Below, piece after piece: positions 16,210-54,206 of a stretch of 64,000 nucleotides of DNA. The DNA is from Obrimoposthia wandeli (taxonomy: Eukaryota): positions 310,001-374,000 of the forward strand of contig CDROCS010000152.1 of the NCBI GenBank assembly GCA_977020255.1, read 5' to 3'. The translations under genes and the position numbers were made by a program. The first letter of the stretch is position 1; every line of letters begins with the position of its first letter. The notes beneath the pieces are model-generated. The model saw only the letters and a program-made list of their open reading frames with translations. It was not told the DNA's origin and searched no databases.

Positions 16210-16274
16210 TTCATCAAATTCATCCGCACACTGCCCCTTCGGTATCTACATTCCCTCCCATCGCAACATTGGTT
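16210..16274 (+). CDS. Candidate upstream exon of the LNS-domain gene (possible EGF-like end)
   Basis: C-ending codon bias (SSNSSAHCPFGIYIPSHRNIG) and a GTAAGT donor at 16275 in phase 1. The leftover T plus GC of exon 31838 makes TGC (Cys). The acceptor could be the AG ending at 16197 or 16209. Linkage is inferred only. Confidence 0.35.
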
Positions 16275-17690: not shown

Positions 17691-17691
17691 A

Positions 17692-17731
<40 letters not shown>
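17691..17731. repeat. (TA)n microsatellite
   Basis: A run of TA repeats with one interruption is read directly from the sequence. Confidence 0.95.
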
Positions 17732-17734
<3 letters not shown>

Positions 17735-19030
17735 ATAATAGTCGATGGTTATTGATAAAAATTTGTACCATATTTATAGATTCCAAACCCCATTTAGAGA
17801 TAGAGTTTGTGAAATCTATTTTGATAATTTATTTTATCTAAAAACAATTACTTCAGTTCAAATTTCGTTGATATATACATTCAGGTAGACCTTATCCCTT
17901 GGTTGCTTCAGATTTAAATACATATTTTGCATACGAGAAAAATATTGATTTTATTGATTTGAAAACTTTTATTCATTGGTTTTACAGGGTTGGGATTTTT
18001 TTATATTGTTCCTCATGTCATTTCTTCAGAATTTTTCTTCATAACTTTTTATCATTTTTCTATATTCTTATTACAATTTTACCATTTCAGTAACTTCTTA
18101 TTTCGGTTACATGAAAACTGCATTGTGTAAGCCATAAAAATCTTCATATCTCAGTGGTCTCAACTAACAATAACAAAATAACAACTCAACGAGAATGATT
18201 TTTCTTGTCTTACAGAAAAAAGCAATGACCGATGTTGCAAATTTTAAAATAAAATAACTATAGAAAAAGCAGTTTACATTCCACGAAGATCCAAATACTT
18301 CATCCAAATCCATCGTTGCTGTCTTCTCTAACAGATATCATTAAAACTACTTCGTTGGTAAGTCGAGGGATTTTCCAAAAATGCAAATGGCCTGAGATAA
18401 TCTCATGTGTGTTATGTATATATGAAAGTGTAAAAGAGCTGGACCAATGAGCCGCTCATTTTACATACTGGAACTAAGTGCACTGAAGGAACATTCCACA
18501 TAGTAAGTTGGCATTATCAAAGTCGATAGAACTCTTTCTAAATGCACTTGGCAAACCACTTAAAAATAAAAGGCAAAACATCAAAGAGGAATGAAACAGG
18601 CTCAAAACCAAATGGATATTTTTGTAATCGTCTTAATTCTAATATGATTTGAAAATATATACTAAAAATGTCTACTTAATTATGTCTTTTATATATATCA
18701 CAAACTAAATTGACTAAACCACGATTTTTTTATCATCAAATAGTTACCTGAATTAACTAATTGGGGATTTTAATTGGACATTAAGCAATGTAATAGCCGC
18801 AAGAAAAAATACTCTCAAATACAGATAGATGATATTATTTAAAGAAGATTAATGAAAATTTCTAAAAGCGTAAGATGTGGAAACCAAATAAATAATAATA
18901 CATGAACAGGTACCTAGCGATCTTTTAAACTGGGAAGTAAACAAAATGTCCCAAAAAATGAAAACAATAAAAATTGTAAACATATAAAATTCACAAAAAT
19001 CATGGATGCAAATATTTATTGAAACTGATA

Positions 19031-20101
19031 CTAAACCATGGTGTAGATTTGTATATAGTTGCTTTCACGAGCGTCTTCAAGAACATTTTTAATCGTGATC
19101 TGGGAAATACAGACGTCGTCTGCACAATACCACTGGCCATCGTATTCTACATATGCCATATAGTGTCCTCCATGCAAATTTCCTATTTGACGAACAATCG
19201 CTTTCAGACGGTACGGCAGCATTTCTATCAAACTTCCGTCGTTCTCCTGCAATGGCAACTCAATTTCTGTCTCGATCGTCATTGGATCGCGGTTCTTCTT
19301 CATCCGGAACGTTTCTGTATCATACCTAAATCTCTTCACACCGACAATGAAGTTCCGAGGAAGCTTCTTCACAATCATTCGTTTCTCCCCAGAACAGGGT
19401 CCACATTTCTCACACTTAAACTCCTCCACAAACTCTGGCTTGAAGATGTCGGTGATATTTTGGCCGGGCTGCATGAACAAATTGTTCTCTGTCACCACGG
19501 CTTCCTGGTCCTCGTCGCTGTTCTCGCCACATCGGCTACAGAAGTACTGCACCTTCATCTGGGTCTGGAAGTACTTGGTAATAGGGTTGCAGATGAGCCC
19601 CAACTCCTCGTCGCCATTCTCAGATTTCTCCTTCTTGACAGCGGCCTTGAACTCCTCGTCAAGTCGATCAAGCAAATAGATCATGAACTCCTGGGCGTCT
19701 TCCATGTTGTTCCACTCAAAATACGAGCAGTAGTACTGGAGCCCACCGAATTTAGTCAATGCCTTCCTGGTGTCGACCTTACTTTCTCCTAAAGCGGACC
19801 TGATCAAGTTATCGATTAGGCCAAAAGCTTTGTTGTTCTCGTTCTCCAACAAATCCCTGATCAAGTCAAAGAACTCTTCATCGAGACATGCTAAAATAGC
19901 CTGAAATACGGAGTTTGCGTAACAGATGCTGCTCTCATTTACTAGCTGCGGAGGACTTGAAATGAAGCAGTCTTCTTCAGCTTCCAATAAGGCAAACTCT
20001 CTCGCTTCGTCACTATCAACTTCTGCTATTTCAGCACTGGATTTGGGGTTGAACCGGCCCATTAAGAACGTACTTTCATCAATGGTGTCCTGGTAGTTCA
20101 T
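19031..20101 (-). CDS. Intronless ubiquitin-specific protease (USP / peptidase C19), 356 aa
   Basis: Cys box LVNESSICYANSVFQ (N55, C60); EDAQEF; zinc pairs C188xxC191 and C230xxC233; LPRNFIVGVKRF; His box YRLKAIVRQIGNLHGGHY (H313); WYCADD (D328/D329). Intact ORF, with AATAAA about 10 nt past the stop (plus-strand 19015-19020) and TATAAAT about 31-37 nt upstream of the ATG. Confidence 0.95.
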   Translation of the reverse strand: MNYQDTIDESTFLMGRFNPKSSAEIAEVDSDEAREFALLEAEEDCFISSPPQLVNESSICYANSVFQAILACLDEEFFDLIRDLLENENNKAFGLIDNLIRSALGESKVDTRKALTKFGGLQYYCSYFEWNNMEDAQEFMIYLLDRLDEEFKAAVKKEKSENGDEELGLICNPITKYFQTQMKVQYFCSRCGENSDEDQEAVVTENNLFMQPGQNITDIFKPEFVEEFKCEKCGPCSGEKRMIVKKLPRNFIVGVKRFRYDTETFRMKKNRDPMTIETEIELPLQENDGSLIEMLPYRLKAIVRQIGNLHGGHYMAYVEYDGQWYCADDVCISQITIKNVLEDARESNYIQIYTMV

Positions 20102-20899
20102 CTTTTCGAGAAGATGCTATTTAAAGGAGAGATTTATAAACAAATTAAGAAAATTAATTAAAGATAGCGCAAAACTGATTTAATCAATAAAAGCTTTGTT
20201 AGATAAATATTTATTTATATTCTCTATATCAGGGACAGACAAATTCTTTTGATGAAGCCCCATGTTTATTTGGATTCTGTGGGCCAAGTTAACCATTATA
20301 AAAAAGGCCTATAAGAGGCTTTTTAATTACCATAAATTTTACTGAAATAGTAATTTATGAGTTTTCATATTATTAGTTGACCAAAATCACATATGGTCTG
20401 TGAATAGGAGCTGTTAGCGGGCTTTGTGTATTGATTTCTCATGAAACGCTAGGCGGGAAACAACTGGACTACACGCCGATTTTGCCAGCCTCTGCTTTAG
20501 AGGATATGGTCAATTATAATCTCTGGATAAGAGTGTTTTAAACTTACTTGGTAACATAATTTGATCGAAAACTCTATTATATATTTTGAAAATCAAATTA
20601 TCTCCATAACCCTCCAGACGAATTTTACAAAATGAAACAATGATCCAGAAATGTTCCATGAGCAGACGGATATTTTAAGTATTTCTTAACTGCTTCGTAA
20701 CTTCTTTTGTTATTGTAATGAATCTTTGTATTTGAAAACGTTTCTTAAATTATCTTTATTTAGCTTTTCTTTGCGGCTTAAATAAATTTATTTAAAATTG
20801 ACAATGTATAATAAGATATATCCTTTATTTGTTCAACAGTGTATAACTAAGTAAAGTAAAACCCAAAAAGCACATGTATAATTGTCTATTTACATACAT

Positions 20900-31837: not shown

Positions 31838-31978
31838 GCACAGATTACAAAGACGTAACCATGGACAACAACGCAGAGATCTCCTACTCATTTCCAGCAG
31901 AGATCCTCAAAAACACAAATCGATCTATCTCTCTTCAGTTCAAGACAAAGCAACGCGACACATTTCTGCTGTTCCTAG
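31838..31978 (+). CDS. Internal exon A of a laminin-G/LNS (neurexin-like) gene
   Basis: ttccag|GC ACA GAT...CTA G|gtgggg, 141 bp, phase 1/1, encoding TDYKDVTMDNNAEISYSFPAEILKNTNRSISLQFKTKQRDTFLLFL(G). This is a typical LNS start (ISLxFKTxQRxxLL). Confidence 0.8.
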
Positions 31979-43188: not shown

Positions 43189-43427
43189 GTCCTGCCTCCT
43201 CGGGTTCTGAGAAGCTGCAGGAGTTCCTGTCAGTGTACCTGGAAGCTGGCCAACTGAAGATTGTCACACATTCTCGTAGCGTCAACGGGGGTGGAGGTGA
43301 CGGGATCGAGACCGTCTCGGGAATGTTCATGTTCCACAACAAGGTGCTGAGCTGCCTGAGCCGCTTCTACGAGACCTGTGCAGACAACCGTTGGCACTCC
43401 CTATCCATCACCCAGATGGCCAATCAG
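43189..43427 (+). CDS. Internal exon B of the laminin-G/LNS (neurexin-like) gene
   Basis: Two ACTAAC branch-point-like motifs, then cacag|GT CCT...AAT CAG|gtgcgc, 239 bp, phase 1/0. Encodes (G)PASSGSEKLQEFLSVYLEAGQLKIVTH...CADNRWHSLSITQMANQ (LNS motifs xFLxLxLxxGxL and DNxWHxV); strong GC3 bias. Confidence 0.85.
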
Positions 43428-54032: not shown

Positions 54033-54206
54033 ATCCTTGTACAGTTGGACAAAAAGACGATATATTTCTACAGCCTCAGCTTCAAGTTTGAGACGAAGAA
54101 TCTATTTCTGCGTTTGGCAAAACTCCCTACAGATATCGTTCCCCGTGACAAGATCTACCATGGATCACTGAAGATGCTCCCGACTTTCAGAGGCTGCCTA
54201 CAGAAT
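54033..54206 (+). CDS. Internal exon C of the laminin-G/LNS (neurexin-like) gene
   Basis: CTAAC branch motif and pyrimidine tract, ttcag|ATC...AAT|gtaagt, 174 bp, phase 0/0. Encodes ILVQLDKKTIYF...LFLRLAKLP...PTFRGCLQN, with the LNS C-terminal FxGCL motif. Confidence 0.9.

What the first reader, a model, noticed from the sequence alone, without database searches (positions are those of the whole stretch)
19031..20101. Intact, intronless, minimal USP deubiquitinase amid dead transposons, possibly nested antisense in the LNS gene
Seen: this is the only long ORF with an intact recognisable protein. It has the catalytic Cys60/His313/Asp328 and a four-Cys zinc ribbon, no accessory domains, no introns, GC-rich sequence confined to start-stop, AATAAA right after the stop and no poly(A) tail. 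Motifs are divergent: QLVNESSICY for GLxNxGNTCY, MEDAQEF, and Q305 where the His box usually has its first His. Exon A of the LNS gene is internal, so upstream exons must exist; if 16210-16274 is one, the USP sits antisense in a 15.6-kb intron. Inference: a retrogene or a member of a lineage-specific USP expansion. Viral or Polinton cargo is a weaker alternative, since a polB fossil lies 8 kb away.
Basis: partly seen in the sequence, partly recalled or inferred. Interest (0 to 1): 0.7.

Follow-up and report, generated by a model that had tools for sequence, protein, structure and literature searches.

The report
Intact single-exon ubiquitin protease gene
An ordinary-looking but very divergent gene for a small ubiquitin-removing enzyme sits intact and without introns among decayed transposons; it looks like a long-resident host gene, not a recent retrocopy or viral cargo.

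Summary
Window 19031-20101 (minus strand) is an uninterrupted 356-codon ORF. It encodes a complete USP (peptidase C19) domain (Pfam PF00443, E=2.3e-35). All catalytic and zinc-ribbon residues are present, and the predicted fold is confident (pLDDT 88).

Its GC by codon position (0.47/0.31/0.59) matches the neighbouring host exons (0.47/0.36/0.64), against a 29% GC background. That is the composition of a long-resident, maintained gene.

Among 1.84 billion representative proteins the best relatives are only 27-31% identical. They form a small clade of short (348-429 aa) USPs, collinear end to end. One is a deposited Schmidtea mediterranea record; the others come from very AT-rich environmental contigs. 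The three whose DNA I could read are uninterrupted as well. The window protein is sister to that clade (179/200 NJ bootstraps).

I found no poly(A) tail, no flanking repeats, no transposon domains nearby and no paralogue in the window. Giant-virus USPs score lower than generic cellular ones.

- A recent retrogene and viral or Polinton cargo are not supported.
- Membership of a narrowly distributed single-exon USP lineage is supported.
- Antisense nesting in the putative LNS gene cannot be decided from this window.

This is a new member of a known kind, of modest interest.

The parts
19031..20101 (-). Complete single-exon coding sequence of a 356-aa USP-type deubiquitinase (ATG 20099-20101, TAG 19031-19033)
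   Evidence: ORF; Pfam PF00443 E=2.3e-35; collinear end to end with relatives of 348-429 aa, including the C-terminus; AF2 pLDDT 88.4
19952..20101 (-). N-terminal about 50 residues: acidic, low-confidence, not conserved, with one predicted helix (residues 31-41)
   Evidence: pLDDT 45-72 over residues 1-50; N-termini of relatives are variable in length and sequence
19043..19945 (-). USP catalytic domain (residues 53-353)
   Evidence: Pfam envelope 53-353; Foldseek hits to USP35, USP46 and USP12
19922..19939 (-). Cys box: N55 to C60 (catalytic cysteine codon 19922-19924)
   Evidence: N55 and C60 invariant in 55 of 55 other USPs
19403..19540 (-). Zinc-ribbon cysteines C188, C191, C230 and C233 in the fingers region
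   Evidence: Each conserved in 91-96% of the 55 other USPs and invariant in the short-USP clade
19115..19189 (-). His box: Q305 (usually H), G312, H313 (catalytic), D328, D329
   Evidence: H313 and D329 invariant; position 328 is N or D in relatives; Q305 shared with 4 of 55
19015..19020 (-). AATAAA polyadenylation-signal-like hexamer, 10 nt after the stop; no A-run follows
   Evidence: Read directly from the sequence; such hexamers are common in AT-rich DNA, so this alone is weak evidence
31838..31978 (+). Neighbour: exon A of the putative LNS gene (acceptor AG, donor GT; enters and leaves in phase 1)
   Evidence: GC3 0.54; no Pfam hit on its own
43189..43427 (+). Neighbour: exon B of the same gene (phase 1 in, phase 0 out)
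   Evidence: GC3 0.73; Laminin_G_2 E=0.054, below threshold; no PDB sequence hit
54033..54206 (+). Neighbour: exon C of the same gene (phase 0 in, phase 0 out, donor GTAAGT)
   Evidence: GC3 0.59

Best explanation
This is a resident, maintained, single-exon protein-coding gene of the host animal. It encodes a minimal ubiquitin-specific protease (peptidase family C19). The protein has a short disordered acidic N-terminus followed by a bare fingers-palm-thumb USP domain with a four-cysteine zinc ribbon.

Inferred mechanism: the fingers hold the ubiquitin globule and the ubiquitin C-terminal tail lies in the cleft. C60, activated by H313 and D328/D329 with N55 at the oxyanion hole, cleaves the (iso)peptide bond after ubiquitin Gly76.

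In evolutionary terms it is a deep sister of a small, sparsely sampled clade of short single-exon USPs found in very AT-rich eukaryotic genomes. One deposited record in that clade is from the planarian Schmidtea mediterranea. It is not the orthologue of any widely conserved USP. If the intronless state arose by retroposition, that event was ancient.

Shown: ORF, domain, residues, fold, composition and relatives. Inferred: enzymatic activity, expression, substrate and age.
For: - **Intact ORF.** It is far longer than chance allows.
- **Domain and fold.** Full-length PF00443 match; confident USP fold.
- **Conserved positions.** 28 of 31 strongly conserved columns are kept, including every catalytic and zinc position, despite about 70% divergence from the nearest relative. 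That is hard to reconcile with long neutral decay.
- **Composition.** Codon-position GC is 0.47/0.31/0.59. The pooled neighbouring host exons are 0.47/0.36/0.64, and the background is 0.293.
- **Relatives.** The best are 27-31% identical, 348-429 aa, collinear to the last residues. The window protein is sister to them in 179 of 200 NJ bootstraps.
- **Intronless relatives.** Relatives sit as uninterrupted ORFs on contigs L001, L002 (a metagenome scaffold) and L003.
- **No mobile-element signs.** No transposon domains, long terminal or inverted repeats, or paralogues around it.
Against: - There is no expression evidence of any kind.
- No close orthologue exists, so dN/dS cannot be computed.
- The exact protein is not on record in the public gene collection.
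- Three strongly conserved positions are changed: M133, F251 and Q305. This could mean altered activity.
- The sister relationship rests on a distance tree. Its outgroups were chosen as best hits to the query, and the query branch is long.
- The taxonomy of most relatives is unknown.
- A 5' UTR intron cannot be excluded.
Confidence: 0.72

Rival explanations
1. A processed retrogene: a reverse-transcribed mRNA copy of an intron-containing USP gene elsewhere in the same genome, kept functional after insertion.
For: - The coding sequence is uninterrupted, and AATAAA lies 10 nt after the stop.
- USP retrogenes are well documented in mammals: USP17, USP26, USP29, USP27X and USP51 (PMC5381560).
- The gene sits in a transposon-rich region.
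Against: - No poly(A) remnant.
- No flanking direct repeats of at least 20 nt.
- Composition is fully matched to host exons.
- The nearest relatives are also uninterrupted in DNA, so intron loss would predate this lineage.
- No candidate parent could be sought, because only this window is available.
Confidence: 0.15
2. A recently inactivated or never-expressed relic: the frame is still open but the gene is no longer under selection.
For: - It lies among decayed transposons.
- Three conserved positions are changed.
- The exact product is not on record anywhere.
- There are no expression data.
Against: - 356 open codons where shuffles give at most 161.
- Strong codon-position periodicity, with GC3 at 0.59 in a 29% GC background.
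- All catalytic and zinc residues are kept.
- The predicted fold is confident.
Confidence: 0.09
3. Cargo of a virus-like or transposable element, such as a Polinton/Maverick or a giant-virus insertion, that brought a USP gene into the genome.
For: - Giant viruses do encode USP-fold proteins: BFVD hits at E about 1e-20 and 16 loci in giant-virus MAGs.
- A weak polB-like piece lies about 9 kb away.
Against: - Viral USPs score 29-51 bits, against 58-75 for generic cellular USPs and 77-141 for the short-USP clade.
- No other element gene was detected in the pieces tested between 8 and 24 kb.
- There are no convincing terminal repeats. The only pair bracketing the ORF is 22 nt, 77% complementary and AT-rich, like nine other chance-level pairs in the same 12 kb.
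- Codon composition equals that of host exons.
Confidence: 0.04

Closest known systems
Unnamed clade of short single-exon USPs (P0003-P0007, P0011, P0013, P0015, P0017, P0153, P0161). It includes GenBank UZP64864.1, deposited as 'ubiquitin specific protease 8 [Schmidtea mediterranea]'.
   Same: - Same architecture: a variable N-terminus of about 50-120 aa followed by a bare USP domain ending 3-10 residues after the last strand.
- The same invariant residues and zinc ribbon.
- Collinear without large indels.
- Uninterrupted ORFs where the DNA could be read.
- Best scores of the whole 1.84-billion-protein library among single-domain hits: 77-141 bits.
- Sister relationship in 179 of 200 bootstraps.
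   Different: - Only 24-31% identical, whereas clade members are 28-52% identical to one another.
- The window gene has GC3 of 0.59, against 0.18-0.26 in the three relatives read.
- Q305, M133 and A62 replace the clade's H, Q and M.
- The depositor's name 'USP8' is not backed by architecture. From general knowledge, true USP8 is much longer and carries extra domains.
USP12 / USP46 (minimal cofactor-activated USPs)
   Same: - Similar size (about 350-370 aa) and a bare catalytic domain.
- Top PDB sequence hits for the single protein, at about 2e-13.
- Near the top for the clade profile, at about 2e-30.
- Among the best structural matches, target-normalised TM 0.77-0.80.
   Different: - Only 23-24% identity.
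- USP36 scores equally well with the profile (3e-31), so there is no specific orthology.
- Binding of WD40 cofactors, which defines USP12/46 function, was not testable.
USP17/DUB3-like multicopy genes and other mammalian USP retrogenes
   Same: - They are intronless USP genes of lineage-restricted distribution (PMC5381560).
- Vertebrate multi-domain USP17-like gene models rank high in the library search through summed domains.
   Different: - A single USP17-like domain scores only 32 bits (P0156).
- There is no tandem array or paralogue in the window.
- USP17 is a mammalian family.
Giant-virus (Nucleocytoviricota) USPs
   Same: Same fold and similar size.
   Different: - 14-29% identity and 29-51 bits, which is lower than generic cellular USPs.
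- There is no viral gene context here.

Membership tests
USP / peptidase C19 (Pfam PF00443) | Profile match above the curated threshold over the whole domain | tested here: met
   122.9 bits against a cut-off of 23.9; model positions 3-254 of 254
USP / peptidase C19 (Pfam PF00443) | Cys box with catalytic Cys and preceding Asn | tested here: met
   N55 and C60, invariant in 55 of 55 aligned USPs
USP / peptidase C19 (Pfam PF00443) | His box with catalytic His and Asp/Asn | tested here: met
   H313 invariant; D328 (N or D in relatives); D329 invariant. The first His of the box is Q305, as in 4 of 55 others.
USP / peptidase C19 (Pfam PF00443) | Fingers-palm-thumb fold | tested here: met
   AF2 pLDDT 88.4, pTM 0.85; Foldseek hits to USP35, USP46 and USP12 with probability 1.00 and target-normalised TM 0.77-0.80
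USP / peptidase C19 (Pfam PF00443) | Hydrolysis of ubiquitin conjugates | not testable with these tools
   Inferred from the residues and the fold only
Short single-exon USP clade (P0003 and others) | Groups with the clade to the exclusion of other USPs | tested here: met
   179 of 200 NJ bootstraps, with the clade itself at 200 of 200. Caveats: a distance method, outgroups chosen by similarity to the query, and a long query branch.
Short single-exon USP clade (P0003 and others) | Same architecture and uninterrupted coding sequence | tested here: met
   Collinear alignment to the C-terminus; uninterrupted ORFs in L001, L002 and L003
Processed retrogene | Poly(A) tract at the 3' end | tested here: not met
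   No A-run after AATAAA
Processed retrogene | Target-site duplications flanking the copy | tested here: inconclusive
   No flanking direct repeat of at least 20 nt. Shorter ones cannot be told from chance in AT-rich DNA.
Processed retrogene | Intron-containing parent gene in the same genome | not testable with these tools
   Only this 64-kb window is available; it holds no paralogue
USP12/46 orthologue | Specific best match and high identity to USP12/46 | tested here: not met
   23-24% identity; USP36 scores equally with the clade profile
USP17/DUB3-like | Close sequence similarity and a tandem multicopy arrangement | tested here: not met
   32 bits to a single USP17-like domain; no second copy in 64 kb
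Polinton/Maverick or other element cargo | Lies between element termini, together with element genes | tested here: not met
   No element domains in the 20 pieces tested between 8 and 24 kb. The polB-like piece is sub-threshold and isolated. No credible terminal repeats.
Gene nested antisense in an intron | Host-gene exons on both sides of the USP | tested here: inconclusive
Downstream exons A-C are phase-consistent.

The most novel reading that the evidence does not exclude
The window gene and the short AT-rich USPs together represent an undescribed, ancient clade of single-exon minimal deubiquitinases. Its patchy distribution (this animal, a planarian, unidentified very AT-rich eukaryotes) might reflect horizontal spread rather than vertical descent. 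Its altered Q305 and M133 positions might point to a modified specificity, for example for a ubiquitin-like modifier.
Probability: 0.1. Interest if true: 0.55.

Novelty: new member of a known kind. Interest (0 to 1): 0.25.

Why it matters
The main value is for annotation. This is very probably a real gene that automated pipelines may miss or mask, because it is intronless, has no close homologue and lies in a repeat-rich region.

It also adds a deep branch to a barely sampled group of minimal USPs. That could interest people who study how deubiquitinase repertoires diversify. It is another example, outside mammals, of an intronless USP gene.

Nothing here bears on a long-standing open question.

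Tried and rejected
- **Word-indexed protein searches.** The three searches recovered almost nothing, not even most members of the query alignment. All homology conclusions therefore rest on the full HMMER scan.
- **Exact look-up of the product.** Not on record.
- **IMG/VR with the single protein.** Nothing. With the alignment, only distant giant-virus USPs came back.
- **PHROGs and NCBIfam.** Nothing relevant.
- **Pfam on flanking pieces.** 20 stop-free pieces between 8 and 24 kb gave no transposon or virus domains.
- **Repeat search around the ORF.** There are no LTRs or TIRs. The 22-nt, 77%-complementary pair at 17949-17970 and 20171-20192 brackets the ORF. I judged it chance, because it is AT-rich and one of ten similar pairs in the same 12 kb.
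- **Rfam and tRNA scans.** Nothing.
- **Bacterial-type promoter and terminator scan.** Not informative for a eukaryote.
- **A TATAAAT at 20132-20138.** It lies 31-37 nt upstream of the ATG, but such strings are common in 25% GC DNA, so I gave it no weight.
- **Source organism.** I could not identify it. Low CpG depletion (observed/expected 0.82-0.88) and GC-rich exons in AT-rich introns argue against a planarian such as Schmidtea, whose relatives of this gene are AT-rich, but they name no taxon.
- **Taxonomy of the relatives.** It could not be obtained beyond one named record.
- **Literature.** I found no paper on this planarian USP record.

Full report
**1. The observation**

The minus strand of window 19031-20101 carries an ATG-to-TAG ORF of 356 codons. 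In the whole 64 kb only two other ORFs reach 120 codons. One is the antisense shadow of this ORF and the other is a 120-codon ORF at 58.4 kb. In 200 shuffles of the window the longest stop-free run averaged 117 codons and never passed 161. The chance of 356 open codons is about 2e-10 at the ORF's own composition and about 1e-13 at background composition. The ORF is therefore not a chance feature.

- The window contains no N.
- GC is 45.6% inside the ORF and 24-27% in the 100-bp bins immediately outside it.
- AATAAA lies at 19015-19020, 10 nt after the stop, and no A-run follows.

**2. What the protein is**

- Pfam gives a full-length match to UCH/USP: PF00443, E=2.3e-35, 122.9 bits against a cut-off of 23.9, model positions 3-254 of 254. 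No second domain is found.
- The best PDB sequence hits are USP46 and USP12, at about 2e-13, over residues 53-339.
- An AlphaFold2 model built on a 56-sequence alignment is confident: pLDDT 88.4, pTM 0.85. Only the first roughly 50 residues score poorly.
- Foldseek places the model with USP35, USP46, USP12, USP30, USP21 and USP2. The top hits, USP35, USP46 and USP12, reach target-normalised TM 0.77-0.80.
- In the 56-sequence alignment N55, C60, D135, E138, G312, H313 and D329 are invariant. The four zinc-ribbon cysteines C188, C191, C230 and C233 are conserved in 91-96% of the 55 other sequences.
- Position 328 is Asn or Asp in relatives (29 N, 24 D, 2 S) and Asp here. Position 329 is Asp in all.

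M133 replaces a 95% Gln, F251 an 87% Leu and Q305 a 93% His. Four of the 55 other USPs also have Gln at position 305. The window protein keeps 28 of the 31 strongly conserved columns. Other sequences in the alignment miss up to seven of those columns; the median is one.

On sequence and fold this is a catalytically complete minimal USP. Activity itself is inferred.

**3. Relatives**

The word-indexed searches were nearly blind here. The exhaustive HMMER scan of 1.84 billion representative proteins found 3891 hits at E of 1e-3 or better.

The best single-domain hits are ten proteins of 348-429 aa, 27-31% identical and scoring 77-141 bits: P0003-P0007, P0011, P0013, P0015 and P0017, plus P0153, which first turned up in the profile search and scored 117 bits in the later pairwise comparison. 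One search added an eleventh, P0161, which one search scored at 86 bits. It is not in the alignments or the tree. Generic cellular USPs score at most 75 bits.

The ten align with the window protein end to end. This includes a shared C-terminus a few residues after the last strand, and there are no large indels. Among themselves they are 28-52% identical and fall into three subgroups. The window protein lies outside all three.

In a neighbour-joining tree of 56 USPs the ten are monophyletic in 200 of 200 bootstraps, and the window protein is their sister in 179 of 200. There are caveats. It is a distance method, the outgroups were picked as best hits to the query, and the query branch is long.

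Only one of the ten carries an organism name: UZP64864.1, deposited as 'ubiquitin specific protease 8 [Schmidtea mediterranea]'. The others come from metagenome or SRA assemblies.

On the three contigs I could read (L001, L002, L003) the relatives are uninterrupted ORFs of 24-29% GC, in flanks of 6-26% GC and without poly(A) ends. L002 is labelled a metagenome scaffold. The single-exon state is therefore shared with at least part of the clade.

The high-ranking very long vertebrate hits are USP17-like multi-domain gene models from Thomomys, birds and fish. Their scores are sums over several domains. One USP17-like domain alone gives 32 bits.

A profile of the clade scores USP36 (3e-31) and USP46/12 (about 2e-30) almost equally in the PDB. 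No known USP subfamily can be named as the orthologue.

**4. Resident gene, foreign gene or decaying copy?**

GC by codon position is 0.47/0.31/0.59 for the USP. For the pooled three neighbouring plus-strand exons it is 0.47/0.36/0.64. The background is 0.293.

A gene that arrived recently from an AT-rich source would not look like this. Nor would a copy drifting neutrally in a 29% GC genome. Together with the retained active-site and zinc residues at about 70% divergence, this is the main argument for a long-maintained host gene.

The evidence against mobile or viral origin:
- tblastn finds no second copy or fragment in the window.
- No LTR, TIR or direct repeat brackets the ORF. The exception is a 22-nt, 77%-complementary AT-rich pair of chance quality.
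- Twenty stop-free pieces between 8 and 24 kb gave no transposon or virus domain.
- Giant-virus USPs exist and share the fold. They score only 29-51 bits, below generic cellular USPs.

**5. Retrogene?**

The classical marks are absent or untestable. There is no poly(A) remnant and no long target-site duplication. No parent could be sought.

Because the relatives are also uninterrupted, any retroposition would be old. Intronless USP genes are a known phenomenon in mammals: USP17, USP26, USP29, USP27X and USP51 (PMC5381560). The kind of thing is therefore not new.

**6. Nesting**

On the plus strand, three exons have AG/GT borders and mutually consistent phases:
- Exon A, 31838-31978: phase 1 in, phase 1 out.
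- Exon B, 43189-43427: phase 1 in, phase 0 out.
- Exon C, 54033-54206: phase 0 in, phase 0 out.

The introns between them are about 11.2 and 10.6 kb. Exon A starts mid-codon, so at least one exon lies upstream.

The LNS label is weakly backed by tools. Only exon B touches Laminin_G_2, at E=0.054, and it has no PDB sequence hit.

I ran a crude codon-usage scan of all phase-compatible AG...GT intervals in 1-31837. It found nothing comparable to the known exons, which score 23-66 bits. The best non-artefact candidate scored 11.7, inside a transposon-like stretch.

The USP lies 11.7 kb upstream of exon A, about one typical intron length away. Nesting can be neither affirmed nor refuted from this window.

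**7. Verdict**

This is a real, intact, very divergent minimal USP gene, most likely a maintained host gene. It belongs as an outlier to a sparsely sampled clade of single-exon short USPs. It is a new member of a known kind and of modest interest.

The most novel reading still open is an undescribed ancient clade with patchy, possibly horizontal, distribution and altered specificity. I put its probability at about 0.1.

**8. Slip**

Noticed in passing
window 31838-31978, 43189-43427, 54033-54206 (+): Three phase-consistent exons of a plus-strand gene with introns of about 11 kb and GC3 of 0.54-0.73. Together they read like one laminin-G/LNS-type domain, but only the middle exon gives a sub-threshold Pfam hit (Laminin_G_2, E=0.054).
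   Followed up: partly
window 18980-19789 (+): A 270-codon stop-free run antisense to the USP ORF. It also came top in my crude exon scan. It is best explained as a by-product of the sense-strand codon bias, not a second gene.
   Followed up: partly
window 20401-20500: A 100-bp patch of 48% GC, 300-400 bp upstream of the USP start codon, in otherwise 21-35% GC DNA. It is single-copy in the window and has no Rfam match. It could be a promoter element, a 5' exon or a small repeat.
   Followed up: partly
window about 24.8-25.1 kb (-), about 29.7-30.0 kb (+), about 10.1-10.3 kb (-): Decayed mobile-element coding pieces: piggyBac-type transposase (PF13843, E=3e-8), Harbinger-type DDE (PF13359, E=4e-10) and a sub-threshold type-B DNA polymerase piece (PF03175, E=0.003). 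I did not count their breaks or reconstruct them.
   Followed up: partly
whole window: CpG observed/expected is 0.82 for the window and 0.88 for the ORF, so there is little CpG depletion. Exons are much more GC-rich than introns (about 0.49 against 0.29). Both are clues to the unidentified source organism.
   Followed up: no
L001, L002, L003: The relatives of this USP lie in extremely AT-rich DNA (flanks 6-26% GC, ORFs 24-29% GC) from environmental or SRA assemblies. Apart from one planarian record, the organisms are unknown.
   Followed up: partly
L004-L019 (IMG/VR giant-virus MAG contigs): Sixteen giant-virus contigs encode USP-domain proteins; the twelve whose ORFs I extracted are about 290-380 aa. 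They are more distant from the window protein than ordinary cellular USPs.
   Followed up: partly
window 19981-20011 (-), residues 31-41: A predicted amphipathic acidic helix in the otherwise disordered N-terminus. It might be a protein-interaction motif. Nothing was tested.
   Followed up: no
window 17691-17737: An (AT)n microsatellite of about 23 units, 1.3 kb downstream of the USP stop.
   Followed up: no
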